Positions 1 to 39,763 of a DNA stretch of 64,000 bases are shown in pieces. Under the pieces are notes generated by a model, which was not told the origin of the DNA, did not search any database, and saw only the letters and a list, made by a program, of their open reading frames with translations. Source of the stretch: Paragordius varius (Eukaryota; Animalia; Nematomorpha); the NCBI GenBank assembly GCA_964247055.1, contig OZ176054.1:1178001-1242000 (forward strand). Direction: 5' to 3'. Position 1 is the first letter of the stretch, and every line of letters starts with the position of its first letter. The translations under genes were made by a program, and so were the position numbers.

Positions 1-152
1 GCTTGACGCATCTGCAGTTACTAATACCCAAAAAAGTATATTAAAAAATTTAATATATAGTTCAGGGTAACAAAGAAGCATTTTAAGAGCCGCATGCGGC
101 CCAGGAGTCGTGGTTAGAGTTGTATATATTTTCAATTAATTAAATATATTAC

Positions 153-3100
153 TGAGTTTGACTGTACCATTGGAATCAATCATGATATTGGTAGATTTTA
201 TGTCTCTATGTACAATATATTTGGAATGAATATGAGATAAGGCTTCCAAGATCTATGAAAAAAGTGGCAAAAAGTTATAAGACATCCTGTTAATTTTTAG
301 TTTAATTTACTCTTAATTCTTTATTTAATATATCCTACACTTATATATCCATAAGGTTTTACAGGTTTAAATTGATGTATATATTAAAAACCTGTTGTGG
401 CGTAAAAATGATGTTTTAGCCTAACATAGATTAAAACAAACGTATATTACGGGGTTCAGAAATATCTTGATGAGTATATATTATGGACAAATATTTCAGG
501 ATTTTTCTGCTATTTTTAACTTTGAGCTTTACCAATAAAAAAGCTAACGATGTTATTTCTCCATATCAAAATAGCCCAAATTTAGTGGAAGTTACGATCA
601 TCGTTTCAGAAAATTTTTAAAAAATATCATAAACTATATTTAAAGACCGAAACAATATCTATAATATATTAAAATTTAATAGGCCTAAGTCTCACATTTT
701 CGGACTCGGTTAAAATGGATACATGTTTGAAGATTTGGGCAAGATTACAATTTAAATCAAATTATAAATAGTTATGGGTGAAATTAAAATGCATTAACTA
801 AAGGACCAACTGAAATGTTTAAGGACCAATTTGAAGTCCAAACGGTATCCTTCAAAGATTTTCGAAACAAAATTATTAATTTTGAAATTGTGTTCAAAAA
901 AAACATATTGAATATTTAATAGCTAGTTTATACATTGAAAATTATTTTTGAAAAGGGTACACTTTTTATGTAAAATTATTAGAACATCAATATGTATGGG
1001 TTTAAGGTCCAATTATAGATTATCGCTTTGGTTAAAGTTTGAAAGCCAGAAGTGATAACTAAACATTTTTATGAATCCTTTGGCATTTTAAATTGTATGC
1101 GTTGAACTTATTATTTCATATATACGATTCATCTCATATAAATGATAAATCTATCTATACATAAACCCGAAACCAAAAGCGACAATCCTGATACATATTT
1201 TTACAAGATTGTTAGATTTAAGCAGTATATTTTTTGTACTGTATCATACAATCACACCAATATTAAGTGCATGCATCGATAAACTTTATATTTTGAAACA
1301 CTAAAATAATAAATCATCCGAAATACGCTTAATTAAAATGATCGTGTGAAAGATAAATACTCAAAATCAGCATTTTATGTAACAAAATATAAAATTAACC
1401 TGATGACAGATTAAGGCTAGTAAAGGTTCGCAAAGCTTTTGACGAGCCAAATCACACAAAGTAACCCCATCAATGTTCTCCATGACGATCTGTGCATAAT
1501 GAAAAAAGCACTAATAGAGAGAGAAATGACACATATTGTAAATATTAATTCATGCAATTAGATAACTCCTTTACCCATAAACTGTGTCTATAAAAGCTGG
1601 AGCCAAGATATTTGACAATGTTGGGATGTTTAAGGTTCATCAATAAAAATATTTCACTGACCGCTTCGTAATTAAGCTGTTTCTTCTTGAGTTTTATCTT
1701 TTTTAATGCTACGTCATACTCTTTACGATATTTGGCAAGGAACACAGTACCAAAGCCCCTAAAAAGTATAAAATCATTAAGTAAATAAACTACAATTTTA
1801 AAAATATTTTAAAAATAATTAAAAATTACCCTTTTCCAAGTTTTTTGCAAACATTATATTCGGGCGGGAAGTGTTTGATAATCTTTATTGTGCATTAAAA
1901 TAAATGTAAAAATGTTGATAGTAATAATATTTTTCAATAATTGTGTTTATGAAAAGAAAAATTTTAAGAGATACTCACCTCTTTCGGAGGTTCAACTGCA
2001 TCATGATAACTGGATACTAAAATATTGACGGTTTTATAATCAATTGTAAAAAGTATTTATATAAAATTTTATATAATACATGAATCATTTTGCCAACAAG
2101 ATTTCGCCGAACCATACTGAGATGAAACTAAATAAAGGTTAAAAATAGTATACTTTTAAAACATTCAAGATTTATTAAAATTTGATTGTATTGATATATA
2201 GAATAATGCCCAAAAAAATACCACAGTATAATTATAATCTACCTGTTTTTGCAGGCTCGAAATCACCAGCGCCCTCCTCTTGCGGCCCTACAATACTGTG
2301 GTAAACTAAATAAAAAAAATATTTACCTGTAAATAACAACAACTAAATGTTAATTTGAATAAACTTTGTCAGAATCGTATTTATTTAAATTGATTATATT
2401 TGGCATGTTAATCAAAACATTCTTCATACTTAAATAATATATTATTCTGTAATTACCTGATTCATTTCCTGGTTTTTCTTGCTTGGCATCTAAAAAAAGG
2501 TTAACAAATTACCATAAATCAAAAATATTTGAATTTATTTGACTATCTTTTATTTAATTGGAACGATATCGTTTTTTATAAATAACCTCACATATCGTAA
2601 CCTAAAATTACTTGGTGAATAACGGAACAAAGCTGGTACTTTAAATCATTTTCTCTGTTTTAAGGTTTTTTTAACACAATATTTTAATCGCTTATGAATT
2701 ATGCAAGCTAACTTTATTAACTTTATACATCCATATGTAATTATCCTTATTATTGTTTAAAAATAGTAATAAAAGTTATTGGGTAGTAAAAAAGATTTAC
2801 CAACTTTGCCGTAACACACGATATTTATTAAAAAATTGTAGGTTTATAATACCTGGAGGGGGACGACGCTTTTGGAACACCTTTCGAAGGGTTCCTAACA
2901 AGCTTTCTCCGGGCACCCCGAGTTTTCCCGCCTCACCATCTAAACAATAATTAATCAGCATTAGGATAAATTAAACTTGCACTCTTAAAGGCAAGCAAGA
3001 AATATTTAAAGAATCTTACCCGGCGGTTCCCTTCTCCTCTTCTGGAAGAACCCCCACCGGTTCTTCCACCGGGGACAACAGGCTCGATTCCTCCTAGAAT

Positions 3101-18295: not shown

Positions 18296-20354
18296 CACTG
18301 TGCGCAAAAAAGGCGGGTAAAAAATAAACAAACATGATTTTTATCTAGAATAATAAGAAATCCTTTGGAAAAGGAGACCCCAAAAATTTTGCGGCAAAAA
18401 TGCGCTCCAAAATGGAAATATTCCATTTTTTCATTTTTGACTAGAAATAGATTTTTGTCCATATTTTTAAAACTTATTGAGCAAACATGATAAAACTTTT
18501 ATATATTATATAAAACCTAATATATTCTTAAGAAAAATACATAAAATATCTTAAAGTTTCAATAATTTTTTTATTCCACAAAAATAGAAATTCGTAAATT
18601 TTATAACATTGTCGAAATATATTATAAAAAAATTATTTGTAAGAACTCCATTTTGTTATTATTATTTAAGTTTATGACTTATATAACATACCAAAGAGTT
18701 GGTATATATAATAAAGGCTATGTATCTTTTTAAGTCCCTCAAAAAATTTGTATTTTTTGAAAAATTTTTGCGATTTTTGTTGCATTTTCCTCACATGCTT
18801 CTCACTGTTTCATAAATACATTAATCCGCATTTTTCAAATGCGAATACTGAAAAACCAATAAGTCTTCAAGATTATGAAATTCCCTTTATATTTAATAAC
18901 ATAGTTAATATTCAATTGCAAATTAAATAAAGACCTTTTCTGCTATATATATGGAAGGTATCATCGCCCTACAAATTCGATTAAAATAACTGAACAAATA
19001 ATTACCTATTACAACATGTATTTTGCTAAGAAATTAGTTCATTACAAGGAAGTATGAGCCTACAGCAAGGTAATTATATTAATTCCGGTGGAGGGCTACA
19101 AACCAGGATGGAGAACGGTTCCATCAAACGCTCAAACATAGAGAAAAAAACTATACTAGTTCCAATAGTTGGTGAATACTATTGGAATCATTTTATGTCT
19201 GACTAATATATTCATTGTGTATAAATAAATTTAAATTCTTATATGTATTTGAAGTGTTGTTGTTGGGTTAGACTATCTTCTGATTTGAAGCTTGTCGTAT
19301 TATTTTCTCCAAGAAGTGTGATCGAGATCATCATTAATGTTTATATTTATTATTTGTTTGAGTGCATGGTAGCTTTTCCATGTTTGTGTGATTCTATCTA
19401 TGATAGCCTCAGTTACGCCACCGTTGTCAGTAATAATGTGACCTAATGTTTGAATTGAACAACTGTTTCATAATCAGATTCATTGTGTATCGTATGGTTG
19501 GGAGTGTTTGAAGAGATGTTGCAGGAGCAATTTTTGCAAACGAAGTTTGTATTTGACAATATCTTGATAAGACCGGAACATTTTTATTTTAAAATTTTGC
19601 AGAAACCTAATTAAATATTCCTATTGTAAAAGAATGCTAAAAATTATATCGAATAAAAATAAATCCATCTATTATCAGTTTTTCAATATATATAATTGTA
19701 ATACTTGTTTGATTTATAATTTGGCAATAGAGTTTCTGGAAGTAGATTATTTACAAATGTCAGAATAGGTGCAAGAAAATTCTATATTATGATCAAAAGG
19801 TCTTTAATTAAATTTATTATCTATAGATTAAATAGTATATAAACATTTATCCAAAGTAATGTAATGGGAATTTCATAATCTTGAAGTTTTATTGGTTTTT
19901 TCAGTATTCGCATTTGAAAATTGCGGATTAATGTATTTATGAAACAGTGAGAAGCATGTGAGGAAAATGCAATAAAAATCGCGAAATTCAAAAAATACAA
20001 ATTTTTTGAGGGACCTAAAAAGATACATAGCCTTTATTATATATACCAACTCTTTGGTATGTTATATATAAGTCATAAACTTAAATAATAATAACAATAT
20101 GGATTTCTTACAAATAATTTTTTTATAATATATTTCGACAATGTCATAAAATTTACGAATTTCTATTTTCGAGGAATAAAAAAAATTATTGCTACTTTAA
20201 GATAATTTTGTGTATTTTTCTTAAGAATATATTAGGTTTTAAATGGAATATTTCCATTTTTGGGCGCATTTTTCCCCCAAAATTTTTGGGGTCTCCTTTT
20301 CCAAGGGATTTCTTATTATTCAAATCATGTTTGTTTATTTTTTTGTGCGCAGTG
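18296..20354 (+). mobile_element. Second Chapaev3-type element, an internally deleted non-autonomous derivative (~2.06 kb) with ~0.5-0.6 kb TIRs
   Basis: Ends read tta|CACTGTGCGCAAAAAA ... TTTTTTGTGCGCAGTG|ttt. Arms ~18296-18887 and ~19865-20354 are inverted, with the right arm missing ~85 bp. A transposase remnant NQDGERFHQTLKHREKNY at ~19101-19155 matches the GERFHQ catalytic-Glu motif. Confidence 0.8.
19330..19570 (-). mobile_element. Non-LTR retrotransposon RT C-terminal fragment inserted inside the Chapaev3 derivative
   Basis: Minus strand reads ETVVQFKH/(frameshift)GHIITDNGGVTEAIIDRITQTWKSYHALKQII, resembling the RTE/L2-type V..FKYLGS.IT.DG....I..RI..AW motif. Confidence 0.6.
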
Positions 20355-21187
20355 TTTTATATAAAAAAAATTTTTTGCTATTTTTTGATATGGACCAAAG
20401 TGAATCCTTTTTTCATTGACTAGTAAGGTCCAAACTAAAAGGACCATTAGAATCCTCTTATTATAGGTATAATTTTCATTACTCCTGATTTTGTTGCCCT
20501 GTGTAATGGTTATCGATATGATATGTTATAAAAAGAGAAAGTAAATAATCATAAACAAAATCAGTTGAGAACTGCAGTTTTTCATTATATGATTAAAAAC
20601 AAAATAAATAAGATGAATCATTTTTTCCGGTTCCTTATATTTTTAAACGGCCGTGGAGTGGTTTTGACTCAAGTGTTTTATGATTCCAGTTCTGCTTCCT
20701 TTTTTTGATTTTCTAAATTCCATTGTTATTATAAAATAAGAGTCAAGCGCAAAAGCCCATGGCCACAAAAATTAACTGCTATTTCAATTGAATAAATAAT
20801 AGAAAAGTTTATTATTTAAATAAAAAGGTGTAATTTAACCATTTTGTACCCGTGTTTTCGGCCTATAACCTTACTAAGAAGTGTTTGTCTAAAAGCTTGC
20901 AGCCGCCTTAAACACCTAATCCTCGGGATTAAAAATGGAAAACGATTATTTTTCGAAATTAGTGTTTTATAATTGTATTAAAAATTTTGTTTGGTTAAAG
21001 TTTAAAAATTTTAAATTAAATGTTTTAATACATCAAAAAACTAAACGAAACACTCTCTCCTGAGATGAATCAGACAATTAAACACAACATAACATTAATA
21101 TTGAAAGAGTCAAAAAATAAAAAATGAGAATCCACTATGGACATATTAGATATAACTGGTGTTTTATTTAAAATATAAATAAAAAAA

Positions 21188-21259
21188 TGGAGGTATGGGG
21201 TTTCGAACCCCAGACCTTCCGCATGCAAAGCGGACGCTCTACCACTGAGCTATACCCCC
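21188..21259 (-). tRNA. tRNA-Ala-TGC: tRNA-Ala (anticodon TGC)
   Basis: GGGGGTATAGCTCAGTGGTAGAGCGTCCGCTTTGCATGCGGAAGGTCTGGGGTTCGAAACCCCATACCTCCA folds as a cloverleaf. It has the G3:U70 alanine identity pair, anticodon stem TCCGC/GCGGA, TTCGA T-loop, and a T7 Pol III terminator immediately after. Confidence 0.97.
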
Positions 21260-21319
21260 GTGTGCTGTGTTACACTCATTTGATCATTATGTACCTTTCA
21301 TTAGTGTAAATTTAAACAC

Positions 21320-21904
21320 ATGTTTCGAAACAAAAATCAAAGCAAATACGCCTATGCATATTATCTTGATCAACCTTTTCAATCGTATAAATCAGAAGAT
21401 CAAGGAATCAAGCATACAATTCCGGGATACAACCCTAAAGGATGGACACTTGTTGATAATTTTAAAAATGTTAGCACGGAAAGTGCAAAAAAATCTAGGC
21501 ACGCTTTAAGAGGGTAAAAATTTTGATTAACCTACAGAAAATTATTAAAACCCAATGTGAAAGATGGGAAAAAACATTTGAACGAAAACATTTATTTAAA
21601 ATATCATGAAAAATCTGAAGCTATCGAAAAAGAATGCAAAAAACGTGACAAAGAGTGGAGAAAATCCATCGAGGCAAACGATGATTCCAAACAAAAGAAT
21701 CATATTTCCAACAAACAACTTTCAGAAAATAGCTTTAACCAAAACAACAATACAAACGATCTTATTTTACCAAATTATTCCTATTGGCCTAGCATTTTTG
21801 AAATAAATCGCATTAAAATCGTTAAAAATGAATTACTTCCAAAAAGCGCCTTCGGTAGGTCTTTACCAATAATAGAACCCAAACCATTTTGTTATAAACA
21901 TTAA
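21320..21904 (+). CDS. Hypothetical ~186 aa protein, two exons joined across a 24-nt intron
   Basis: ORF 21320..21517 and ORF 21557..21904 fuse in frame if gtaaaaattttgattaacctacag (21514-21537) is spliced, giving ...HALRG|KLLKPNVKDGKK...LLPKSAFGRSLPIIEPKPFCYKH*. I recognise no family. Confidence 0.6.
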
Positions 21905-22142
21905 TTTATTAATTATATTTATATATGGAAAAATAAATATTATTTATAATTGTGTAGTTTTTATGAATTGTAAATCGATCCATTGGGTGTTGATAATTTT
22001 CTCGCATAGATATGAGTTTTTGAGCATAACATACCCTACAATGAAGAACAAATATATGTGTAAATAGTTAGAACACAAAATTCATTATTTATTCTGATTA
22101 AAGAGATAAAATTTTGAATTTATGTCAGGCCTTAAAGTTTAA

Positions 22143-24971
22143 TTATATACCTTGGTAAGCATGTTTGGAAAATGGGAAATACTGTTTCAATATTGATGGA
22201 AGAATATTGTCTAATGAACTAAGGTTTAGATGTGTTTTGTGGTTATTGATTTTTATTTCTTTTTGTAATGGGATTAGGTTATCAAATAGATATACATTTA
22301 TGTATTTTTCGTCAACTCCAGTAATTTGACACAATGTTTTCTATATACATATAATTATTTTATATATAAAATTAATAAAATCAAAATATTCAATTTTAAC
22401 ACTTTATTTTTAAAAACATTACATTTTGGGGTATTTACAGTAAAAACATTACATTTTGGGGTATTTACAGTAGAGTTTCTATTTAATTGTTTTGCAGTTA
22501 ATTATAAAACATTGTTCTCTTAAATTAGATAAAAAAGATCATCTTTAATTTTCTAATCTATAGAATTTTAGGATAAATCCAAACGATTTCAAACAGCTTA
22601 TTTTGAAATCAATGAATAACACTTCGTGAATTATAATAAAAAAGCTTTCAAGCTAATTATTTATCTTCCATAGACTTTTATCTGTTGTCTTAACGATATA
22701 AAACTCCAAAAAGAAAAATGGCGGCAAAAACGTTTAGGATGATTATTTATAATCAATATTATATTTTTTAAAACCAATAAAAAACAAGCCTAAAAGATGC
22801 TTATATTTGTATGTGGACGAAAATCTTCGAAACTTTATAAGTTATGAATTTAAAATGGCTATACAAAATGTAATGATGTGTTAAAATTATTACTTGAATA
22901 TCGATAGCAGAAGTAATATGACGATTGTGTTGACTAGAAAATAAAAGAACGTTGGGTTTTGCCAAATTACATTTATGCATTTCAAACAATTGTTCAATGG
23001 AAGTTTTTTCAAATTTATTGTGATGTTCATTACAATACGTGAGCCACTGAGACCTTAAAATAAAATATTTAAAAACTAAAATATATCATTTAAAATTTTA
23101 ATACAAGCATTCGGTTTAAAAGGAAAAAATAATATTAAATACATTTATATTGCAATATTAATATTGATTTAAGACCTAAATTATTATATTTTTTATTTTT
23201 AATCTCACAATGCAACAATTACAAAATTTATAGAAATATTAGTTTAAGGAATTATAGATGTACATACTTAAGTATACCATTACACTTCAAATCTCCCATT
23301 ATTAAAATTCACCCTTAAACAATTCAAATTCACCCTAAAAACGAATAATGTGTTTTTTTAAGATTAAAAATTACCTATTTTTTATCTTTAAAAAACATGA
23401 AAATTTGTTTAAAATAATACTGAAACTAAAGATATATATATTAATAATGAGTTATATTAGTTCGAAAACACATAATTTATTTTGGGGTATAATTATTCAT
23501 GAATTTGAATTGTAAATGGTATTTAAAGTAATTAATATTAAGTAGATTTAATGGGGGCACCAGTCTTTTCAAAATAAGAAAAAAATATTTTTTATAATTA
23601 AAATATTTCTCTAGCAAAATAATTTGTGAAAACAATTTTTAATCATACTTACCGAGTCATTAGGAGGGTCTGAGAAATAAAACTTTCGGCTAACCCAAAA
23701 GTTTTGGGAATACGTTTACGCTTTCGCCGTCGTTTCGGATTTTGGGAAACTTTGTTGAGCAATTTTGTTTCACTTACAATCGTTTGAATGGGAAAAAGAT
23801 TTTTTGGAATGTTTTTCTTAATTATTTTGGGTAAGGCGGAAATGTGATTGGGAACAAAAATGGTTGTTGAGATATCAACCTTTTTATTATCATGAGTTAC
23901 AATAGGATTATGCAGGCGGTTTTCATTACTTACGATCGCTTTTTCGTTTATTGCACCGTGATTGATTTTTTCAAAGCTTAAAACATTTTCTTGATTTTGA
24001 TGATTGTGTTTAAGTCGTTTGTTGGGCAAAACAAGTTTTTCAAATTCTGGAGAATCAAAATTTCTTTTATTTGCCATTAAATGATCAATTTTCGGTCGTT
24101 TAACATTACTTATTTCTGTTGGAGTATGAGAGTGTCGTTTAAATCTATTAGGTATCTCAGGCTCATCTTTGCAATTACCAAGGGTATGATTTAACTTTTT
24201 ACCACTTGACTGTCCTTCTGTATTTAACAAATTATCCCCTGTTTCAGGTAAAGAATGCCGCTTGTTTAGAGCTAACGAATTAGGTTGGATATTAGATTGT
24301 GTTTTTGGTTGTGAAGTTAGCTTTTCAGCATGCAAAAATGTCCATAAATTTTTAAATGTTTTATCATTTTTACTACTATTGCACATGAGCTTTTTACATT
24401 TAAGAGCCAATTTCAAAGACTCTTGAGACTCGTAAATAATAAATGCATAGGGTTTAGGTTTTTTATATTTATATATTTTACAAAATTCAATTGGGCCAAA
24501 AAACGAAAACCACTTTTTGATATCAAACAAATTAATATCGGTAGAATTCGAAAAAACAGGATTCAACTAAAGATAAAAAGGACAAAAATACCAAATACAA
24601 AGATCTTGTATGGAAGTCATTACTTTTCAACTTGGACAATAATCCAATACAATACAAGTCTTTTAAGCTACAAACATTAGTTTCGTAATTCACCTAAATT
24701 TTAAGAAAAATATACGTCAAAAATGTCTGATTTGCTTAAAACTCGTTTTATATCTGAAATGTTTGAAGTTATTCTCCTTACTTCGTTAAACTCCAAAAAA
24801 AGTGATATAGGCAATTCTAAATTTTATGTAACATTTACCGTTGTCCAAATCTTTTCCCAATAAATTTTGTAAATATGCATCAAAATTAAGATTAGATGCT
24901 GAAAAATAAAATTCAATCTAACATTAAATGAGTTAAACTTGTTTTTTAAGTCTTTTCAAATTGACAGGCAT
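22143..24971 (-). CDS. LARP7: La-motif + RRM protein, LARP7-like (3' exons tentative)
   Basis: Splicing introns of 21, 22, 22 and 25 nt gives MPVNLKRLKKQ|IEFYFSASNLNFDAYLQNLLGKDLDN|ELPISLFLEFNEVRRITSNISDIKRVLSKSDIFD|V.. (La motif), then RSLYL|LNPVF..IKKWFSFFGPIEFCKI..PYAFIIYES (RRM). Further on, MTR|SQWLTY.. and IHEVLFIDF resemble the LARP7 SEW helix and xRRM (EVLYVDL). Confidence 0.78.
22411..22470. repeat. Perfect 30-bp tandem duplication
   Basis: taaaaacattacattttggggtatttacag occurs twice. On the minus strand it can read TVNTPKCNVF twice in frame within a tentative LARP7-like exon. Confidence 0.9.
23275..23521. mobile_element. MITE with TA-CCATT termini in the LARP7-like intron; a related copy lies at ~52843-53052
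   Basis: Ends read taccattacacttcaaat ... atttgaattgtaaatggta. The subterminal ttcaaattcaccctaa motif is shared with the 52843-53052 copy. Confidence 0.6.
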
Positions 24972-25049
24972 TTAATTCAGATTTTAAATTCATAAGCCGT
25001 GGTTTTAAAACTGAACATTCACTAAACCGTCCGGATTTTCATACGAAAA
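24972..25049. promoter_or_regulatory. 78-bp head-to-head interval between the LARP7-like and PSMC3 start codons (probable bidirectional promoter)
   Basis: The ATG at 24971 (-) and the ATG at 25050 (+) both open frames that splice into conserved domains. Confidence 0.65.
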
Positions 25050-29621
<4,572 letters not shown>

Positions 29622-30157
29622 ACTTGATATGTTTTTACTATTTTAAATAAATAATTTGCGCAATTTTATGGGTAAAAATGACAATTCAATTCTACGGAAT
29701 ATTTTGAGTTAGATTTCCGAGAAGATCCAAATTTTAAGTAATTATGACAAAACGATTAGTATTCATTATGTGTACCATTAGCATTTCAAATATGTCCTTG
29801 AACACTTCAAGTTTCACCACCAACACTTTTATTAGTTCTAAATAAGAAATTTTTTTTAATTATCTTGCGAAATTAATAATTATCACAGAATTATGTTTAA
29901 AGTAACATTTATTAGGGTATTAATTATTTGGATATACATAAAATTAAAATTGAATATAATTAATAAAAGGAGTATACTTAAAATAAGTCATATAAGGATA
30001 AAAGTACAATGAGTGTAGAATGTATTTGCTAAAAAATCGCACCGGGAAATTAGAATTAAGAATTATGGACTTAGTTAAAAATGTACTGGCATAATTTACA
30101 CATAATTTTTTTTACAAAAAAAACATGTGTAACAATATTTTACCCTCCTAAAATTAA

Positions 30158-33100
30158 TTATAAAACAGATAATAGGAAATAAGTGACATATATGAATATA
30201 GGTATGCTTTGTAAAAACAGTGATATTCCAACATTATTGTTTGAGGCAGAATTTCTTTTGTCAATGACTGAGTTGTTTGTTACAAGGGGAACGTTCATTT
30301 GTTCATTTTCATGGATCTTAACAAAATCCATATCGTTTGTGGGACATTGCATGGCTTGACATAAGAGAACAGACTCGCGCGTACAGGCACATGTTTGACA
30401 TGATCGCATATCATTGCTCATTAGAGTTATCTTTTCTGGTGAACCGGCCACATAGTATTGTCCGTTGGCATAGCAACCTATATAACGAGGATTATATTAT
30501 TAAAATTTTATTAATGTACCATTATTTATAAATTAGTGGTAACAAGCTACACGAATGGCTTCGCGGGTCGCATTCGAAATTTGTGTGAGCATAAATGAAT
30601 TTTTTATTAAATTTCAAACATAAGATTGCAAAATCAAAAACTTATTTAAAAAATTTAATTGAAAAGATTAATTTCACTTATATTTTGTGCGGATATTATT
30701 GCAGATTATGGATTTTCAAATTTTTTGCGGCCTGCACATAATATGTCGGAAGTTGGGCACCTCTAATTTAAATCGAATTAAATTATAGGATACAAAAATA
30801 TTTAATTTACCAAATAAGTTTATTGTCATGTTTTGTGGATTAATGTTAAGAAGGTTTCTCGTTTCCATCGATCGCAATTTATCCATCAATGCTTTGTTGT
30901 GTGTGAGATTCGGCGAACTCATAAAAACTACTGTTTCAATTATAACACTTCCAGGTCTACAAAGTGATAATATATTAAAAGTTGACATTATAATTACTTT
31001 TTAATTTAACAAGCCAGTTATTTAACCCATATATAAGTATGATTAGAAATCGCTATTATTTCATTTATTTTTAATTTAAAAATAATCCTTTAAAACAAAA
31101 ATTGAGTGGGTAACGACGAGAGTTTGTAATGTAAATGATGTTAGAATCGTCGTAAAATAACGCAAAAATAAAAATATAATTTATTAATTCTCAAATTTTC
31201 GCCATTGGCATCATCAGGAGATTAGTTAAGAAAAATATATAAAATATAATAAAATAAAAATTAAATTAAAAAAATGAACAAAATCATGGTTGATATTACT
31301 TATATAGGAAAAAAATCACAAAATAACCGTTAGTGATTAATTAATATTTTTTAGCTAATCCAAAAACCGTACCTCAGATTAGCAATTTTAACGTTTTGGA
31401 ACTCAGGCAAATTCATAAGCGCATTTCTCAGCTAACAAAATGTAAAAAATATATTAACGTGATATATTTTTAATTTAACAGGAAATACAGAAATATTGGT
31501 ACCTTTATCTCTAATTCATTTTTGTATAACTGAGTTTCAGGTGAATCCAAAACACTGTATTCCCCTTTCCAAGGCTCATCAATTGCAAATGATAAATTAT
31601 AAACTGACCCAATTGGGTTTTCTGTTAAGATAGTTCCCAACGCGACCGGTATCAAAGTTGTCCCATCTAAAAAAATTAGTTTATTTTTCCATATATTTTT
31701 TTGAATCAAAAATGAAATTAAACTAACTTACTTTCTGGCACACATTTTTTGATACAGATTTTAGTGTTTGTAACATACGGCGGTATTCTATGTTTTTGTA
31801 TGGTTCCATCTTCATTCCTATTCAATCATATCAAATATGATAACGATAGATAAAAATACAAAATTAAATAAATCAATCTACTTACCATTCTCCCGTATCG
31901 TAGGGAAAGAAAAAATAGCCACAATCATTGTCCGAATCTCCGAATTGAAAATCGTGGAATTTATCTTCCGTTTGACGTTTTCGCTTAAATTGAATCGTTG
32001 TAACATTGTTGATAAATGATCCATTTATGTCATATATGTTCTGCATGGAATCTTTAGTCGGTTGGCTATAACCTTCAATCCATCTACAAAAAAAATTAAA
32101 TGGGAGTCCTTTATTTTTATAACCAAATGCTTACAGTAACAATTAATGCAGACAAAACGTAATAATATAAATATTTTTTTTCAAAAGACAACAATCTTTT
32201 TTTATCGCTTCATTTTTCGTATAAAAAATATTTAGCTTCAATGAAAAGATACATATGTTTTTTTAATAAGCGTTTTTACTTCATAATTTGCAATATATTA
32301 AGTTTAAAAAAATAGGTTTAAAAAGTACAGCGGTTTTTAACAAAAAAAATTCGCCTTTATATTTTCCGTTTTGTCCGTTAATTTTCATTTTTTACTATAT
32401 ATTATGTTGACATGACATTCAGATTATATTAATCCCTGGCTCCTAGAAAAAAAGGTAAAATTCTTTTGTATAGCATAACTTTTTACCCATCAAAAAGTAC
32501 GACCATGTTATCGCTCGTAATCCATCCATATATAATATCCGTATTTGGCATATTTCGTTGATTAGAAAATCCAATGCCTGTCCATCGGTTCATACTGTTA
32601 CGAGCTTGAATCGTAAATTGAATATCTTCCTCTGAGTCTCCAACCAACTTCCAAGAAGCATGATATTGGCAATTTTTACTTTTATCACAGCCTGTGGGAT
32701 AACTCCATTCCATTATATTACCTGGGTTAGCATTTGCGCATTTTGTGTTTTGAGCGACAAAACTGTTTGTGGCTAAACCACTTTGAGGGGGAGAGGGCAT
32801 AGGAAAATCTGGGGAAAAATAAATTTAATTAATCAATTTTAGAAATTTTTTAGCTAAAATAATTAATTTTAGTGTACCTAAAAAATTTATAGCATCCGTT
32901 CCTCGTAAATTTCGACTTGTCCCATGATATTTGAGTTCATCATCCCGATAAAAGGCTTTATCCTTGGCACTTCCCTTTTTACAAAAATAAATTTATGACT
33001 CAATGTTTTATTTGATGCTTAAATATATATATTATAAAATTTGCCCGATCGTTTTAATGATTTTTTGTATTTTAAACTTCTAAAATTCTATTTTCGAGAA

Positions 33101-36100
33101 ACCCTAATCAACCATATTTTATTTTCCAAAGCAAAAAATGATAATATTTACCATTTCGATCCCCGAAGGTGGATCATGAACGGGTTTAGTTACGTCTTGA
33201 CCGGTGGCCCAACTTACGTGCATTATATCATTGATAAATGTATGGTCAGCCAAATCAGAACCTATTTGCACACAAATATATTTCATATATTCCATTCCTT
33301 AAATTACGATACCATTTTTCTATCGAAAGCAACACTTTTTCAACCAAACGCAACACTTTTTTGAGCAAACGCAATATTTTTCAAACAAATGGAACGTTTA
33401 TTCATCCAAAAGCAACGGAATTAGAAACATTGCGTTTGCTTGAAAAGTTGTTTTAGTTGAAAAAATGTTGCGTTTGATTGAAAAAGTGTTACTTTTGACT
33501 GAAAAATGGTATATACACCCTCTTGAAAATCACGTTTTATACTAAGGTAAAAACTCTGTTCTAATGGTATTGATGATATGGTATAATCATTTTTACTATT
33601 TCCATTTACCTCATGTTCTAAATGAGAAGCTAAATATGGTGGTACGCAGTATTTAAAAATTTATTGCCAACAAAAATAAGACCCGACTTTAAAAATTAAT
33701 TTTCCTACACAATAAAATGAAAAAATGTACAATATAAGATACTTTTTAGTTTGCGTCTAAACATGATTGTCGTTTGTCCATTGCGTTCGAAGCCAAGGGC
33801 AGCTGTTATATCATCTCGACCCCCAAAAACTGTATCCAACATGGGTGTTGATCTGTCCCGGGAATAATAATCTCCTATTCGAAACAAATTTCCTCTCGCC
33901 ATACCAATCACAACATCTAAACATTCCATTGGGTGAATGGCATCCCCTTCTGAAGACATAAAAATAAAAATTTGGGCTGTTTCAAAATTTCGTGTTACAC
34001 TTAATTTGTAAATCATAAATATAGATAAAATGTTTTAATTAATCCGATGAAATGTTGGGCAAAGGCAAAAATATTGAAGACAATTTATGTAAACACATTT
34101 CTTTAAATTAATTACTCCATAAAGTGCAATCGCCAAGTTCAATGTCTATTACAATCTTAATATCTAACATAAGACAAAATAATTGAAACCTTTTCATCAA
34201 AAATATGGCATTCTTTTATTAATCCATAATCTAAATAACTTAGGTAAGAAAATTCTAAGATTGATACTTGTTGCTATGTTATTCAAATCTTCTTCGGAAA
34301 CAGGAATATTTCCAGACGGTACTATTGGGATGACACTGGCAGATAATTTTGGTTCAGCATTTGGTTCAGCGATGATTTCCGAGAGGGGTTGATTATTGTT
34401 GAGGGTTGGTTCATTTAAAGGAGGAGTTTTTATTGTCTCCGGTTCTGTAACGGGGGCTTTATTAACCTTTGGCGTATTTTCAGGCACTGGTTCTGATTTG
34501 GTTTGGGAAAGAGGTTCACTTTTTCCCACGCTTTCGGGTTCTGCTCTCACAGAATTAGCCGAAGGTCCTCTGAGTGGAATAGTAGAACTCGATTTAGCAA
34601 CAACTTCATTATTGGCCAACGTTTTTTCCGCAATAGGTTGAGGAGGTGGTAAATTTTCAGGAATTGCTTCCTTAACAGCGAAAGGAACGACGGGTTTAGG
34701 ATTGTTTTCCCCGGCTGGAATTATTTCTAGGGAAATATAATTGATTTATAGTAAGCCTATAAAATTTTTGTAAAAAGCCATAATTGAAAAACTAAATAAG
34801 TGAAGGCACCTGGTTTAGCCGGTTTTAATGGATTGTTTTCAGCACTTGGTAAATTTTCAGATGACGGGATTTCTGCTTTAGGAGCCCCAATTATTATATG
34901 AGAATTCGTATTTTTATCATGCAAAACCATAGAAAGTTCTAGTGGTTTTTCAGTTGTCAGAGCTTTGTCCATGAAAGAATCCATTGTTAGCGCGTTTGTC
35001 ACTATTTCTATAGGACGTTGAGTGGTAGACAAACTGTAAATTACATAAAAATATATAAAATATACTGCTGTGGAGCTGACTAAAATTATTACCTATGGGA
35101 AAAAATTTTGAGATACCTTAAAAATATTTTTTTTGTTAATAAATTAATATTGAATTTTAAAAATAATATAATAACCAATAAGATCCCTATAGATATTTGA
35201 AAAAATTAATAAAAAATAAATAATTTAATTCTTTTATTTTTTTGTTATTGAGTGTTTTATTATATTTCACACTTTAAACCAGGCGTGTCCAACACAAATG
35301 GCTTCGCGAACCGCATTTTTGACTTAAAAAACCCGGCAGGCGGCCATGTAAATATATATGGGCATTCATAAGGAATTTATCAAACTTTAAACATAAAACT
35401 GTAAAATGCAATACAAAATGGTAATTTTTCTAGTTCCATGCCAATTGGATAGACTTATTTTGAATTGTTTAGGAAATATCAATATTAGGAAAATTTTGTT
35501 AGCATATTTTTATAATATATGGATTCCAAAATTTTCGCGGGCCGGGTCCTGACCACCTCTGCTTTAAACGATAACTTAAAAATTAGGGCCTTATCAAAGA
35601 ATTGCAAAAACGCAATAATGATCAGCATGATTAAATAGGTATATAGCTGTTAAATAAATTATTATATGAGGGTCTAAGTTATTAAAATTTATATAAAAAA
35701 TTTACGTTCCTAATTTAACTTACATTTGTCTCTTGCGTCGCTTGGATGTTTCTGGTTTTGGCTCATTTTTTGGAATGACATTTTCATTTAACATAATTTC
35801 TTTTTGCTGTAAACGTTGAACTTCCGCTTTCGGCAAATTAGATTCGGCTACAGGGTTTTGAGGATTAGAAGATGTTTCGGGATTTGGAGCTTTGCTTAAT
35901 TGTTCAGATATTGGTAATATTTTAACAATTTTCATTTTTTCGGGTTCTGAGGCAGGGGGACTGTTTAGATTACCGCCTTCCGAAATGGGCACAAATAAAT
36001 TATGTTTCGGTTCTTGACTTTCGGCTTTTGGTCTTAAGAGTGTTTCAGGCTCTGATACAGCAACACCTGATGGTTGGGATCCTTCAGCTATGGGTTCATT

Positions 36101-39100
36101 ACGAGGAACACCACTTTCTGCTTTTGGAACACTTTTTGATATCCTATTGTGATTCGGCAATGGAAGTAACGGAATACCACCAGTTTGTAAATTTATTGGA
36201 TACATTTTGCAGTTACTTCGGAGATCTGAATAGAAGATATTTTGTAGCATAAAATCAAAGTTGTGGTGAAAAAAAATGGAGTGTGGTTAAAAAAACATAC
36301 TGTTCGGTCTCCATCCTAGAGCGACCCAATTGGTGGTATTAGCTTGTAAAACTATTTCGATTTCTTTTGCATTTGAGCCCAGGGTTGAGTCTGGTAAAAG
36401 CTTCCAATACATATTGTATCTTGGTGACAATTGTCGCGATTTATAAAATCGTGGATCAAAATTCCATTTATTTAAATCCGTTTCTAAAACAATTTCGGAT
36501 GACATCATATAAAATTGTTGGGCTTAATTAAAAACGGTTATAATTATAAATTATTATATAAAAACTTTTAATTTTAAATTTCATCAATTTAATATTTATT
36601 TTGGAGTATGTATGAAACTAACTTTTTTGACAATGGGTACCAATGTAACCCCATTTGCAGAAACAAATCTTGCTGGGGGATGATGTCGCATTTATATCAA
36701 TACATTCACCATTATTGCAATCAGCATTGTTAGTGCATTCATCTATTTTTACAAATTAACATAGTTTATTTAAAATAAAATAGTTGAATTAAATTAGTAC
36801 AAAGGTGTTTACTAAATTTTTCACAAAATTCTCCGTTAAAGCCTTTGTTGCAGAGACAAACCCCTGCTTGAAGTTGTCCATTGGGTTGGCATCGGTCCAA
36901 ATCTAATAATAAAACCAGATTTTTAGTAAATAATTTTCTATTTTGTATTGGTATAGAATTCTAATGTTTATTTTTCTTTCCGTTTAAAATTTTACCAAAG
37001 CCGATATGGGACTTTATGAATTTTTATAATCCTTTTGTTTTATTTTATTTTAAATTGAATCCGACCTCTCTCAATATGCAATAAATAAAACGCTTCTGAT
37101 TAACTACCTTTTTGGATTCTAACATCCGCACAACTCCAAAAAATATATCCGTGTGGTCCAGCTGTCCATTCCTTGGCTTGTCTTGTTAGGCGAATGAAGC
37201 AATCATCACAGGTTAAATTGGTTGGAAGTGTTACTCTATGACTTTGAGTCCTAAAAAATAGTAAAAAAAAATTAACTCCAGAAACCGATTATAGAGCTTA
37301 ACGCATATTTTCATCCAAGCTAATGTTATTTATAACATAAATAATTTAAAGGTATTTTTATTACACAGAATATATCCTATTTTTGCGTAAATCATAATTG
37401 AAGGGTAATATGTTGAGCTTCAGAATGATGTAAAATTTATTTTAAAGGTAAGTTACTTACGTGACATCAATGTTTTGGAGATATACGGTGCCATTGTGGT
37501 CATCGCTTGGGGCCAAAGTGGCTAAAACCTTGTTGTTTGAATCAATCAATTCAATGCGATATCCTCCCTATATATATATATATATAAACAAATCATATAT
37601 GATAATATGAAATTTGATTTTACAATACTATACATCATTTAAATTTTATATAAAATTACTTGATGTGGATATCCCAAGTGCCAAATGACATCAAATGTGG
37701 AATTTGGGATGAGATTGGTTACAGGTCCTCTTTCTATCACCATAAAAAAATAATTTTTATACATATTCAATTTAATTTGAACAGCCATTTGCATTAAACA
37801 AACAAAATAAACCGATAAAAAAAGTAGATCTCATCACTACATATTCTGTTAACATTAATATAGTTTAAATATTAAAAATATGGAACGTTTGAGAGTTTCA
37901 ATTTAGCCTCAAAAAGCTCTAAAATATTAAAACTCCAAAGATATTATTTAATATAACTCAAATTAATCGAGGGTACTGCTGTACCGCTCTCTGATACTGA
38001 TACTGATATGCATGACGTGACTAGGGCCATTTTTAAAAAAGTGCACCATGTGATAGACTTCAATCATATATGTACAAGATATAATCATTTCAAATATTTT
38101 AAGTAATCTATATAAAATGGTTTTGATAGATTTTATTATGATAAATAGTCTTTACGTAATATTTTTATCATATATACATTGTGTAATTTAGGACTGAACT
38201 ATTGATTTAGTAATAAGCGCTGAAAAGTTCGACCCTTCTTTTATTTATTGAACTAAAATATATCCCACTTATAAAATGAAATTAATATGAATTGTGCTGC
38301 GTTTTATATATAAGGAAGACGTAACTGGGGCTAAATTAACCAATATTTCAGGATTTTTAATTTAAGCTTAGGTTTTGATTCATCAAACCTTATCAAATTG
38401 TGAATTGTATTTTTTTGGCCAAAATCACTAATTAATAAACATTTAACAAAAAATAATATTATATTATAAATACAAAACGTTGCAAAACAATGTAACAATT
38501 TAAGGGCAAGAAGATATATTATATTTCACACCCAAAATGCATAATATCGATTTTTTAATTTATATAGAAAACGCAAAAACACCTTTCTGGATAATTTGAT
38601 TTGCGGGTATTTTCACACTGTAATATAATAGTAATATATATGTCATAAATAATTCTAGTATGTATTGCCAATTTTTGTAACCATTTATTTTCAGAACCCT
38701 CTAAGGCGCCCAAAACATAATAATGGAGGATTAAACATAATAAAAATTCATTATATCATGATTTTATTGATTTATGCTCTCCAGATATTTTACCCAACAT
38801 AGTGTTCTTAAAATTAAGACTTACTGTTGATTTGTCATGTTAATAAAGTTTCTCAATGTCATTATTAATAAATTTTTGAATAAGTAAAAGGCATCATAAA
38901 TTAATCCTATATATTCCTGGAATATTATATATGTAATAAATTATTTAACATATTTACTATTATAACCTATATATTCGTACATATGAAAAAAAATCAATTT
39001 TAACAACAAAATGTGTTTAAAGATAGACAAAAATGATAAAAAAAATTGTTAATTTTGAATATACAAATTAGTCGAAAACAAAGCGAAATTATATCACAAA

Positions 39101-39763
39101 ATAGAGTTAAGCTTAATTAAAGTTATCTATAAAAGGTTAAAAAATCTTCTTAGCAGTATGTGTTTGATTAAATCATCTTTTTTATGGTAAGAAAAAAACT
39201 TATTTAACAACAACAAACACAGATATTTGAATTTTTAAAGTTTAATTAATATAAATGTTTGGTCGTATAGACTTATAAGATTACAGTATGGTAAAAAACC
39301 ATAAATAATTGCAATTAAACACTTTCCAATATTTTAACATTAATAATATTTATTTGATATGGACCAAAGCTTTTTTACATCATACGCTACGGTATTATTT
39401 TATACCATGCTTTTCGTATTAACATGTCGTTAGTATTAGCCTTTACCTTGAAAATAACTGTCTGACAATGTGTCATTTTATTTATGTGTTTGAAGTGGTA
39501 GTAAATAGTTGTTTAAATTGTATTTTTTAATAAAAAATCATTTCAAATAGATGTAAGTTTTTTTCTATCTAAAAATTTGATCAAATACTTGACGGAACTC
39601 CACAAGGTCCAGAGGTTCTAACATTGTCTAAAAAGTCGAATTGGTATGAGCGTGCAGGGGGATATATAATCCTTATGTGAGCTTTTGTAAAATGATTCCA
39701 ATTTAAAAGGAATATTAACAGAAATCGCCAATATGAAGAAATATGTTTATATGTGATAGCCAT
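30158..39763 (-). CDS. Large secreted, probably GPI-anchored nahoda-like protein: signal peptide, His-brace LPMO-like domain, 2 EGF-like, DOMON with long insertion, DOMON, SEA-like, VWC-like, hydrophobic tail
   Basis: Spliced exons read MAITY..FTKA|HIRIIYPPARSYQFDFLDNVRTSGPCGVP..WHLGYPHQ|GGYRIEL..CDDCFIRLTRQAKEW..YIFWSCADV, then two Cys-rich EGF exons. DOMON motifs follow: WVALGWRP..HPMECLDVVIGMARG..DYYSRDRSTP..RRKL..DELKYHG and WTGIGFS..NMPNTDII..QKH. Then PGSVII (SEA GSVVV-like), CQTCAC..LCQAMQC and NSASNN + hydrophobic C-terminus. Confidence 0.88.
30534..30765. mobile_element. hAT-type MITE in an intron, same family as 35280-35561
   Basis: It shares acacgaatggcttcgcgg..cgcatt with the 35280 copy and ends gttgggcacctcta. 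The TSD is imperfect. Confidence 0.55.
33310..33511. mobile_element. ~200 bp fold-back MITE with internal aaacgcaacacttttt sub-repeats
   Basis: Ends read taccatttttctatcgaaagcaacactttttc ... gaaaaagtgttacttttgactgaaaaatggta. The arms consist of inverted tandem sub-repeats. Confidence 0.7.
35280..35561. mobile_element. hAT (Charlie-like) MITE with a perfect 8-bp TSD
   Basis: Ends read ctttaaac|CAGGCGTGTCCAAC ... GACCACCTCTG|ctttaaac. Another end of this family (ccattcgtgttggacaccctt) lies at ~13710-13731. Confidence 0.82.

What the first reader, a model, noticed from the sequence alone, without database searches (positions are those of the whole stretch)
31750..39763. Possible self-contained redox chain: two heme-type DOMON domains wired to the His-brace domain
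Both DOMON domains keep candidate Met/His heme ligands: HPMECLD..LKYHG in DOMON1 and NMPNTD..IQKH in DOMON2. In fungi the DOMON-like cytochrome domain of cellobiose dehydrogenase is the established electron donor to LPMOs. Finding an LPMO-like domain and DOMONs in one extracellular, probably GPI-anchored polypeptide suggests a fused electron-transfer and oxidative enzyme for cuticle remodelling or copper handling. I am not aware of this having been described, but I could not search.
Basis: inference. Interest (0 to 1): 0.78.

Follow-up and report, generated by a model that had tools for sequence, protein, structure and literature searches.

The report
Copper LPMO-like domain fused to heme DOMONs
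This minus-strand gene encodes a cell-surface protein of the little-studied 'nahoda' family that joins an LPMO-like copper domain to two probably heme-binding DOMON domains, so it may carry its own electron relay to the copper, though not its own electron source.

Summary
A clean 20-exon minus-strand gene (39763..30158, 1274 aa) encodes: signal peptide, N-terminal His domain, two EGF, DOMON1, DOMON2, SEA-like, Cys-rich module and a GPI-like tail.

- **Copper domain.** The ortholog's N-domain folds confidently (pLDDT 92.7). It matches LPMOs only, best TdAA15A (Z 13.4). His1, the second His and an axial Phe align with the AA15 copper site.
- **DOMONs.** Both keep Met and His at the positions of the proposed heme ligands of CYBDOM/CDH cytochromes. 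Both residues are invariant in the DOMON2 alignment. The pair is kept in 71 of 75 DOMON1 copies.
- **Coupling.** Nematode orthologs that lost His1 also lost the DOMON1 Met. Ulva homologs carry the same module fused to cytochrome b561.

"Self-contained" is not supported: the animal proteins have no electron-input domain. The cuticle role is untested. The closest ortholog is from the horsehair worm Gordionus, so the host is probably a nematomorph, not an insect.

The held literature has only a passing 2019 note of the LPMO_10/EGF/DOMON combination. Heme binding, copper binding and electron transfer are inferred, not shown. Another first-reader note (s1-305301) flagged the His domain on this same stretch.

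The parts
39680..39763 (-). Start codon and signal peptide (aa 1-28), cleaved before His29
   Evidence: Gene model. In some searches nearly all orthologs show a small residue at -1 and His at +1; His is the first residue in 66 of the 70 N-domains aligned from the start.
37109..39679 (-). LPMO-like His-brace domain (aa 29-166) on four exons: 39763-39589, 37733-37660, 37567-37461, 37250-37108. His1 at 39679-39677, second His (YPH) at 37665-37663, axial Phe at 37141-37139
   Evidence: Profile against PDB hits TdAA15A at E 2.7e-7, with H54 aligned to His91 and Phe to Tyr184. Ortholog model pLDDT 92.7. VIA-align Z 13.4 to 5msz. Pfam LPMO_10 27.2 bits on the isolated ortholog domain.
36624..37108 (-). 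Two EGF-like domains (exons 36902-36813 and 36742-36623)
   Evidence: Pfam EGF_Teneurin E 2e-6 on the exon; same domains in orthologs.
36302..36496 (-). DOMON1, N-terminal part (aa 246-310), ending ..WVALGWRPN
   Evidence: Pfam DOMON profile positions 13-39 on this exon, weak on its own (E 0.04); the profile resumes at position 41 on the exon after the insert.
34269..36301 (-). P/E-rich, probably disordered insert of about 400 aa in the DOMON1 loop just before the Met. It spans exons 36225-35724, 35033-34810 and 34726-34268. It holds a furin-type RRKR at aa 473-476 (from 35740), and Cys316/Cys715 flank its base
   Evidence: In the 37 of 44 family proteins where the two flanking motifs could be located, an insert of 32-581 aa sits at the same place; 27 of them (window included) have an R-x-K/R-R motif in it. 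A disulfide between the two Cys is inferred.
32879..34268 (-). DOMON1, C-terminal part (aa 706-843) on exons 33949-33743, 33261-33152, 32974-32878. Candidate heme ligands Met713 (33929-33927) and His828 (32926-32924)
   Evidence: Pfam DOMON E 4.5e-10, profile positions 41-102. Met and His shared by all rows of the family alignment except one doubtful nematode gene model. MH in 71 of 75 N-domain proteins.
31733..32707 (-). DOMON2 (aa 878-1045) on exons 32808-32487, 32083-31886, 31817-31732. Candidate heme ligands Met930 (32551-32549) and His1026 (31792-31790)
   Evidence: Pfam DOMON E 1.7e-11. Met and His invariant in A3. Ortholog model pLDDT 94.2. Structural matches to DBH DOMON and to heme-b cytochrome domains of CDH, PDH, EBDH and NXR.
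30476..31732 (-). SEA-like region (aa 1046-1169) with a G|SVII motif at Gly1122 (30952-30950)
   Evidence: Exons. Pfam SEA hits in orthologs P0008, P0028 and P0162. Resemblance to the SEA autocleavage motif G/SVVV is from my own knowledge and is inferred.
30158..30475 (-). Cys-rich VWC-like module, then a Ser/Asn-rich stretch and a hydrophobic C-terminal tail up to the stop (GPI-signal-like)
   Evidence: The Gordionus isoform P0153 ends in a similar hydrophobic tail, while P0024 has a transmembrane helix plus a cytoplasmic tail. No exon for a transmembrane isoform was found in the window.

Best explanation
The gene encodes a nahoda-family, mucin-like protein tethered to the outer face of the cell by a GPI-like tail.

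- Its mature N-terminus is a compact AA15/AA10-type LPMO domain. This domain would bind copper in a histidine brace (His29, His82) over an axial Phe156.
- After two EGF spacers come two DOMON domains of the cytochrome type. Each would hold a b-heme between a Met and a His (Met713/His828 and Met930/His1026).
- I propose that the DOMON hemes act as a relay. They take single electrons from an outside donor and pass them, DOMON2 to DOMON1, to the copper.
- The most likely donor is a membrane cytochrome b561/CYBDOM protein fed by cytosolic ascorbate, or extracellular ascorbate itself.
- Reduction to Cu(I) is the priming step of LPMO chemistry. I take the most likely output to be O2/H2O2-dependent oxidation of an extracellular glycan, with copper reduction for uptake as a close second.

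Shown here: the gene model, the domain folds (on the Gordionus ortholog), conservation of the ligand residues, their co-loss in nematodes, and the b561 fusion in Ulva.

Inferred: heme and copper binding, the direction and existence of electron transfer, the donor and the substrate.
For: - Gene model: 20 exons, all AG/GT, one ORF.
- N-domain sequence: a profile of 43 orthologs hits TdAA15A at E 2.7e-7, with the second His on His91 and Phe on Tyr184. These are the copper-site residues named in PMC5823890.
- N-domain structure: ortholog model pLDDT 92.7. The best 50 Foldseek matches listed are all LPMOs or LPMO-like proteins. VIA-align gives Z 13.4 to 5msz with 137 of 138 residues aligned from residue 1.
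- N-domain family: LPMO_10 reaches 27.2 bits against a cutoff of 23, and 40 of 43 members hit it.
- His1 is the first residue in 66 of the 70 N-domains aligned from the start.
- DOMON sequence: Met and His are invariant in A3. The family consensus S-x-D-x-x-M fits the CYBDOM motif SXDXXMGXD, and the Met-to-His spacing of 96 compares with 93 in CG8399 (PMC10691727) and 84 in HYP1.
- DBH, which binds no heme, has Leu at the Met column.
- DOMON structure: heme-b cytochrome DOMONs score Z 10.3-11.7 and CBM9 scores 6.6. The 1d7b range 19..179 spans Met65 and His163.
- Related multi-DOMON proteins pass the Pfam cutoffs for CDH-cyt and EB_dh.
- Two degenerate repeats in P0001 lost Met and His together.
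- Coupling: five nematode orthologs without His1 have Leu, Phe or Tyr in place of the DOMON1 Met, or no recognisable DOMON1 Met region, while keeping the neighbouring Cys. The gene tree needs two changes for this.
- Electron input: Ulva P0199 and the independent assembly P0200 carry the same N-domain, EGF, split DOMON1 and second DOMON fused to cytochrome b561 (26.8 bits against a cutoff of 23).
- Precedent: the CYBDOM HYP1 reduces Fe(III) and Cu(II) with cytosolic ascorbate (PMC10784544).
Against: - No cofactor was seen. Heme and copper binding rest on homology alone.
- I had no model coordinates. The Met-His geometry and the heme-to-copper distance were not measured, and no multi-domain model was made.
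- Both folds were predicted on the Gordionus ortholog (64% identical to the window in the N-domain), not on the window protein itself.
- Two EGF domains and a 403-aa insert lie between the copper domain and the DOMON1 core, so contact is not guaranteed.
- The window protein has no electron-input domain.
- The best single structural match of DOMON2 is the heme-free DBH DOMON (Z 13.5).
- Met/His is common in this whole DOMON subfamily, including proteins without the N-domain. Its presence alone does not show coupling.
- The nematode co-losses may be as few as one event if only well-supported branches count.
- The N-domain has a short L2 region (138 aa against 195 in TdAA15A). The family occurs in organisms not known for chitin, so a polysaccharide substrate is unproven.
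- No RNA run holds the locus, so splicing is unconfirmed.
Confidence: 0.5

Rival explanations
1. Copper handling rather than catalysis. The His-brace domain captures extracellular Cu(II), as the GPI-anchored fungal Bim1/X325 proteins do. The DOMON hemes reduce it to Cu(I) for hand-off to a CTR-type importer. No polysaccharide is oxidised.
For: - BIM1-like_dom is hit by 39 of 43 N-domains, best E 2.6e-7.
- LaX325 aligns at Z 11.3.
- The domain is compact with a short L2 region, and the tail is GPI-like.
- CYBDOM proteins reduce cupric substrates (PMC10784544).
- The family occurs in Ulva, Trichoplax and a sea cucumber, which are not known for chitin.
Against: - The nearest relative by both sequence and structure is the active LPMO TdAA15A, not X325.
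- BIM1-like scores on P0024 and P0106 lie below the Pfam cutoff (19.9 and 21.5 against 27).
- Whether the extra Asp ligand of X325 is present was not tested.
Confidence: 0.25
2. The two modules work independently. The DOMON cytochromes act as a surface ferric/cupric reductase or redox sensor. The LPMO-like domain works with other reductants. The fusion only places them together.
For: - Multi-DOMON proteins with Met/His but without the N-domain are common among relatives.
- In His1-less nematode proteins the other DOMONs keep Met/His.
- The number of DOMONs varies from 2 to 8.
Against: - The DOMON nearest the N-domain loses its Met exactly where His1 is lost.
- The domain order N-domain, DOMON1, DOMON2, b561 in Ulva is the order expected of a wire.
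Confidence: 0.15
3. A non-redox adhesion or matrix protein. The DOMONs bind sugars or other ligands, and the N-domain is a chitin- or matrix-binding module with no working metal site.
For: - EGF, SEA and VWC modules and a mucin-like insert are typical of adhesion proteins.
- Some DOMONs bind sugars, and the DBH DOMON binds neither heme nor sugar (PMC10691727).
- The DBH DOMON is the top structural match.
Against: - His1, the second His, and both Met/His pairs are conserved from Placozoa to arthropods and in Ulva.
- DBH lacks the Met.
- CBM9 is a far weaker structural match (Z 6.6).
Confidence: 0.08

Closest known systems
AA15 LPMOs of arthropods (TdAA15A, PDB 5msz)
   Same: - The fold matches from residue 1 (Z 13.4).
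- The N-terminal His, the second His (His91) and the axial position (Tyr184) all align.
- It is an animal protein family.
   Different: - Only 23% identical and 138 aa against 195, with a short L2 region.
- Axial Phe instead of Tyr.
- Tyr where AA15 has Ala89.
- Always found here fused to EGF and DOMON domains and membrane-anchored.
- Activity is untested.
Cellobiose dehydrogenase cytochrome domain (AA8) donating electrons to fungal LPMOs
   Same: - A DOMON-fold b-heme domain with Met/His ligation delivers electrons to a His-brace copper.
- The ortholog DOMON2 model aligns to the CDH cytochromes at Z 10.6-11.7.
   Different: - There, the cytochrome is fused to a flavin dehydrogenase and meets a separate LPMO protein.
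- Here, the cytochrome-type domains are fused to the LPMO-like domain and no dehydrogenase is present.
CYBDOM proteins (HYP1/CRR in plants, SDR2/FRRS1 in humans, CG8399 in Drosophila)
   Same: - The same DoH-type DOMON, with an S-x-D-x-x-M motif and a His about 90 residues later.
- They lie outside the cell and reduce Fe(III) and Cu(II).
- The Ulva homologs P0199 and P0200 are literally CYBDOMs with this LPMO-like head.
   Different: The window protein and its animal orthologs have no cytochrome b561 domain, so they cannot draw on cytosolic ascorbate by themselves.
X325 / Bim1 LPMO-like copper proteins of fungi
   Same: - A small His-brace domain, a GPI-type anchor and weak Pfam cross-hits.
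- Z 11.3 to LaX325.
   Different: - A more distant match than AA15.
- The fungal proteins have no DOMON partner.
- The X325 Asp ligand was not examined here.
Drosophila nahoda and its named orthologs
   Same: Same family and architecture. NCBI names the Anticarsia and Rhodnius orthologs 'DOMON-like domain-containing protein nahoda'.
   Different: No functional study was found. The gene appears only in gene lists. The name mentions the DOMON only, not the copper domain.

Membership tests
LPMO superfamily (Pfam LPMO_10 / AA10-AA15 type) | His as first residue of the mature protein | tested here: met
   ..FTKA|H in the window. His is the first residue in 66 of the 70 N-domains aligned from the start. 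The cleavage site is inferred from the -3/-1 rule, not predicted by a dedicated tool.
LPMO superfamily (Pfam LPMO_10 / AA10-AA15 type) | Second copper-ligand His and axial Phe/Tyr at the homologous positions | tested here: met
   H54 of the mature ortholog domain aligns with His91 of TdAA15A, and Phe aligns with Tyr184. The role of those residues is taken from PMC5823890.
LPMO superfamily (Pfam LPMO_10 / AA10-AA15 type) | Immunoglobulin-like beta-sandwich LPMO fold | tested here: met
   Ortholog model pLDDT 92.7. The best 50 Foldseek matches listed are all LPMOs or LPMO-like proteins. Z 13.4 to 5msz.
LPMO superfamily (Pfam LPMO_10 / AA10-AA15 type) | Score above the curated Pfam cutoff | tested here: met
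   27.2 bits against 23 on the isolated ortholog domain, and 40 of 43 members match. The full-length ortholog gives only 18.9 bits. The window's own domain lies on four exons and was not scanned as one piece.
LPMO superfamily (Pfam LPMO_10 / AA10-AA15 type) | Copper binding and oxidative cleavage of a polysaccharide | not testable with these tools
   Needs recombinant protein.
CAZy AA15 | Clear sequence membership, plus Ala at the position of Ala89 | tested here: not met
   Only 23% identity and E 2.7e-7 to TdAA15A. Tyr stands at the Ala89 column. Voshol 2019 places DOMON/EGF + LPMO_10 sequences on an early branch outside the named families.
Heme-b DOMON cytochromes (CDH-cyt/AA8, CYBDOM, AIR12 type) | DOMON beta-sandwich fold | tested here: met
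   Pfam DOMON on the exons. Ortholog model pLDDT 94.2. Z 10.3-13.5 to DOMON structures.
Heme-b DOMON cytochromes (CDH-cyt/AA8, CYBDOM, AIR12 type) | Met ligand in the loop after the third strand, and His ligand 85-100 residues later | tested here: met
   Met and His are invariant in A3. Spacing is 96 in DOMON2 and 115 in DOMON1. The motif fits SXDXXMGXD of CYBDOMs. The Met aligns with the Met of the 6jt6 cytochrome, weakly at E 0.58. Residue-level structural superposition was not available.
Heme-b DOMON cytochromes (CDH-cyt/AA8, CYBDOM, AIR12 type) | Met sulfur and His nitrogen facing each other across a heme pocket | not tested
Heme-b DOMON cytochromes (CDH-cyt/AA8, CYBDOM, AIR12 type) | b-type heme spectrum | not testable with these tools
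   Needs protein.
CYBDOM | Cytochrome b561 transmembrane domain in the same chain | tested here: not met
   None in the window protein or its animal orthologs. Present in Ulva P0199 and P0200.
X325 / Bim1-like | Pfam BIM1-like_dom above its cutoff | tested here: inconclusive
   19.9 and 21.5 bits against 27 on P0024 and P0106. 39 of 43 members match at E up to 0.1, best 2.6e-7.
CDH-LPMO two-protein system | Flavin dehydrogenase domain feeding the cytochrome | tested here: not met
   No such domain in any family member scanned.

The most novel reading that the evidence does not exclude
An ancient electron conduit across the plasma membrane that ends in a histidine-brace copper. The path would run from cytosolic ascorbate to cytochrome b561, then to a string of DOMON hemes, then to copper. 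It is preserved as one chain in the green alga Ulva. In animals it would be split into a CYBDOM protein plus the nahoda protein. This would give animal cells a surface copper oxidase or peroxygenase that acts on matrix glycans and whose activity is set by the cell's own redox state.
Probability: 0.3. Interest if true: 0.82.

Novelty: new variant of a known kind. Interest (0 to 1): 0.62.

Why it matters
**Where the electrons come from.** LPMOs need an electron supply. In fungi a DOMON-fold cytochrome on another protein provides it. For animal LPMOs the physiological donor is not established, to my knowledge.

**What this family offers.** It is conserved from Placozoa to arthropods and present in a green alga. 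It has the candidate donor domains built into the same chain as the copper domain. In Ulva the chain even reaches a b561 that can draw on cytosolic ascorbate. The donor question therefore becomes testable with a single recombinant ectodomain.

**A concrete hypothesis for nahoda.** I found no functional study of this Drosophila gene in the papers I could search. This reading gives it a defined hypothesis to test.

**A link to metal reduction.** The family ties the poorly understood CYBDOM metalloreductases to copper enzymology.

Tried and rejected
- **Single pieces against PDB.** A DOMON1 exon and one Owenia DOMON gave only chance hits or a weak DBH hit. They could not place the CDH ligands residue by residue.
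- **DOMON2 profile against PDB**. It reached DBH and, weakly, the 6jt6 cytochrome, but not CDH.
- **RNA evidence.** No RNA run holds the locus. The four runs laid on 31730-37729 are genomic contigs that cover introns and show no splice joints, so splicing and expression remain unconfirmed.
- **Transmembrane isoform.** A tblastn search for an exon like that of Gordionus P0024 found nothing credible in 15001-30300.
- **Gene number CG12781.** I recalled this for nahoda, but it found no relevant paper and is probably wrong.
- **Insect origin.** Rejected because the best ortholog and sister in the tree is Gordionus.
- **Maximum-likelihood tree.** It did not finish in time, so the tree used is FastTree.
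- **Not done.** Two DOMON-type repeats of P0001 and several poorly aligned DOMON copies were left out of alignment A3 by design.
Full report
**What is there**

The window is AT-rich (about 24-33% GC in 2-kb bins). Between 39763 and 30158 it carries a minus-strand gene. I built a 20-exon model by hand from the sequence and from a tblastn of the closest ortholog. Every intron has AG/GT ends, and the joined CDS is one ORF of 1274 codons.

The domain order is:
- signal peptide (aa 1-28)
- His-first domain (29-166)
- two EGF (167-236)
- DOMON1 N-part (246-310)
- a P/E-rich insert
- DOMON1 C-part (706-843)
- DOMON2 (878-1045)
- SEA-like region
- a Cys-rich VWC-like module
- a hydrophobic tail that runs to the stop

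The four quoted motifs are in exons, and one search gives their exact codons. Pfam finds DOMON on the exon pieces. The profile breaks at position 39 on the exon before the insert and resumes at 41 on the exon after it. DOMON1 therefore reads as one domain split by the insert, although the N-part match is weak on its own (E 0.04).

**Whose gene it is**

An exhaustive search with the DOMON2 exon returned long multi-DOMON proteins. Many of them carry an N-terminal domain like the window's.
- The best is Gordionus sp. CAK9300686, a horsehair worm. It is 64% identical in the N-domain and 66-85% identical in several conserved exons.
- In a FastTree of 27 family members the window pairs with Gordionus at 100% support.
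- A word search with the ortholog's N-domain found 48 proteins, all with DOMON. They come from insects, crustaceans, chelicerates, a springtail, annelids, Trichoplax and the green alga Ulva. The exhaustive search had added a mollusc, a sea cucumber and nematodes.
- NCBI names the Anticarsia and Rhodnius members 'DOMON-like domain-containing protein nahoda'.

The assumption of an insect host is not.

**The N-terminal domain is an LPMO-type copper domain**

- In nearly all full-length orthologs the residue after a small -1 residue is His. His is the first residue in 66 of the 70 N-domains aligned from the start.
- A profile of 43 mature domains (A2) hits only LPMOs in the PDB. The best is TdAA15A at E 2.7e-7.
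- In that alignment the family's near-invariant His54 lies on His91, and the Phe of the ..FWSCAD.. motif lies on Tyr184. PMC5823890 names His1, His91 and Tyr184 as the copper site. It also notes that some AA15s have an axial Phe, among them the chitin-specific TdAA15B.
- The AlphaFold model of the Gordionus domain is confident (pLDDT 92.7).
- The best 50 Foldseek matches listed are all LPMOs or LPMO-like proteins.
- VIA-align puts TdAA15A first at Z 13.4, with 137 of 138 residues aligned starting at residue 1 in both. AA16, AA10, X325 and AA11 follow at Z about 11.
- Scanned alone, the domain passes the Pfam LPMO_10 cutoff (27.2 against 23). 40 of 43 members hit LPMO_10 and 39 hit BIM1-like.
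- The domain is shorter than AA15 (138 against 195 aa), mainly between the first two strands, and it has Tyr where AA15 has Ala89.

I file it as an LPMO-superfamily domain nearest to AA15, not as a member of AA15.

**The DOMONs look like cytochromes**

- DOMON1 alignment: the Met of ..MDC.D.. and the His of ..KYHG.. are shared by every row except one doubtful nematode gene model, and Ulva has both.
- DOMON2 alignment: Met and His are two of eight invariant columns.
- The consensus around the Met is S-x-D-x-x-M. This fits the SXDXXMGXD motif that holds the proposed heme Met of CYBDOM DOMONs (Met286/His379 in CG8399, 93 apart; PMC10691727).
- HYP1 has M90/H174, compared by its authors with CDH structures. 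AIR12, a DOMON-only protein, has EPR evidence of heme coordination (PMC10784544).
- Spacing here is 96 in DOMON2 and 115 in DOMON1.
- The heme-free DBH DOMON aligns at E 6.4e-9 but has Leu at the Met column. The Coprinopsis PDH cytochrome aligns Met on Met, though only at E 0.58.
- The model of the Gordionus DOMON2 is confident (pLDDT 94.2).
- Structurally it matches DBH (Z 13.5), then heme-b cytochromes: NcCDH and CcPDH at 11.7, MtCYT and PcCYT at 11.4, EBDH gamma at 10.3 and NXR-C at 9.2. Sugar-binding CBM9 reaches only 6.6.
- The 1d7b alignment spans chain residues 19-179, which include Met65 and His163. With model Met49 and His143 this gives offsets of 16 and 20. That is consistent with equivalence, though I could not view the superposition.
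- Relatives pass the Pfam cutoffs for CDH-cyt and EB_dh.

**Evidence that copper and heme go together**

- *Paired loss within repeats.* Two repeats of a 7-DOMON protein have Lys for Met and Gln or Ala for His.
- *Co-loss in nematodes.* The five family members without His1 are all nematodes: Trichinella, Trichuris, Bursaphelenchus, Rhabditophanes and Heterodera.
  - In four of them the orthologous DOMON1 has Leu, Phe or Tyr at the Met column, while the Cys two residues on is kept.
  - In Trichuris the Met region of DOMON1 is not recognisable.
  - Trichinella also has Gln for the His.
  - Other DOMONs in some of these proteins (Trichinella, Bursaphelenchus, Rhabditophanes, Heterodera) keep Met/His.
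  - On the tree the label needs two changes, although well-supported branches alone force only one.
  - Romanomermis and Angiostrongylus keep His1. By the accepted nematode phylogeny (my knowledge) that implies separate losses in Trichinellida and Tylenchina.
- *The Ulva fusion.* P0199 has the same head: His-first domain, two EGF, a DOMON1 split by an Ala/Glu-rich insert with Met and His kept, and a second DOMON. It then runs into a cytochrome b561 domain (26.8 bits against 23), and I can see four candidate His on its helices. P0200, from an independent assembly and 88% identical over the N-domain, has the same Pfam pair. The domain order is the order of a wire.

**What is not supported**

The animal proteins have no b561, flavin or other input domain, so the chain is not self-contained. 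A partner or a soluble reductant is needed.

Nothing here speaks to cuticle. The family's spread to Trichoplax, a holothurian and Ulva argues against a chitin-only role.

Copper handling of the Bim1 kind is a serious alternative, given the compact domain, the GPI-like tail and the cupric reductase activity of CYBDOMs.

**Limits**

- No cofactor was observed.
- I could not read model coordinates, so ligand geometry and heme-to-copper distance are untested.
- No RNA run holds the locus. The laid runs are genomic.

**Literature**

Full-text searches for DOMON with LPMO, LPMO-like, histidine brace or b561, and for nahoda, found no study of this architecture.

The one mention is Voshol et al. 2019. 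[quoted passage not shown] Subscription journals are not covered by that library.

**Verdict**

This is a real and well-conserved feature. It is a new variant of a known kind: an LPMO-type copper domain with cytochrome-type DOMONs in the same chain. Interest 0.62.

Noticed in passing
window 34269-36301 (aa 310-712); family-wide: DOMON1 is split, in the loop just before its Met, by a P/E/S-rich insert. In the 37 of 44 family proteins where the two flanking motifs could be located, the insert is 32-581 aa long. In 27 of those (window included) it holds a furin-type R-x-K/R-R motif; in many insect members the motif lies about 25-35 residues before the Met. In the window it is RRKR at aa 473-476. 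Two conserved Cys (316 and 715) flank the insert and may staple its base. Proteolytic processing next to a heme ligand could be regulatory.
   Followed up: partly
window 30950-30952 (Gly1122), exon 30956-30811: The SEA-like region has ..RPG|SVIIE.., which resembles the SEA autocleavage motif G/SVVV. Gordionus has ..KGSIMV.. at the same place.
   Followed up: no
P0199 and P0200 (Ulva); paralog P0201: Green-alga homologs carry the whole LPMO-like/EGF/DOMON module fused to a cytochrome b561 domain. A third Ulva paralog lacks the b561.
   Followed up: partly
P0005, P0051, P0014, P0019, P0023 (nematodes): Nematode orthologs have lost His1 of the copper site and, with it, the Met of the adjacent DOMON1, or its whole Met region. 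In four of them (not Trichuris) other DOMONs keep Met/His. On the gene tree this label needs two changes.
   Followed up: yes
P0002 (Haliotis asinina, 2975 aa); P0001 (unnamed, 2184 aa): Some members string together many DOMONs. The abalone protein has eight copies, all with Met/His, which looks like a multi-heme wire. Its N-domain is itself interrupted by a Glu/Pro-rich insert.
   Followed up: no
window 33330-33529, 35130-35329 and 32130-32329 (introns): Contig depth in the genomic runs is tens to hundreds of times that of the flanks, with many odd joints and loose ends. These are high-copy repeats sitting in introns of the gene.
   Followed up: no
window 30158-30240; Gordionus P0024 against P0153: Gordionus has two C-terminal isoforms: a transmembrane helix with a cytoplasmic tail, and a short hydrophobic GPI-like end. 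The window shows only the GPI-like read-through. No exon for the transmembrane form was found downstream.
   Followed up: partly
whole window: The host is probably a nematomorph. The closest ortholog and tree sister is Gordionus, and the runs holding the locus carry two organism labels.
   Followed up: partly
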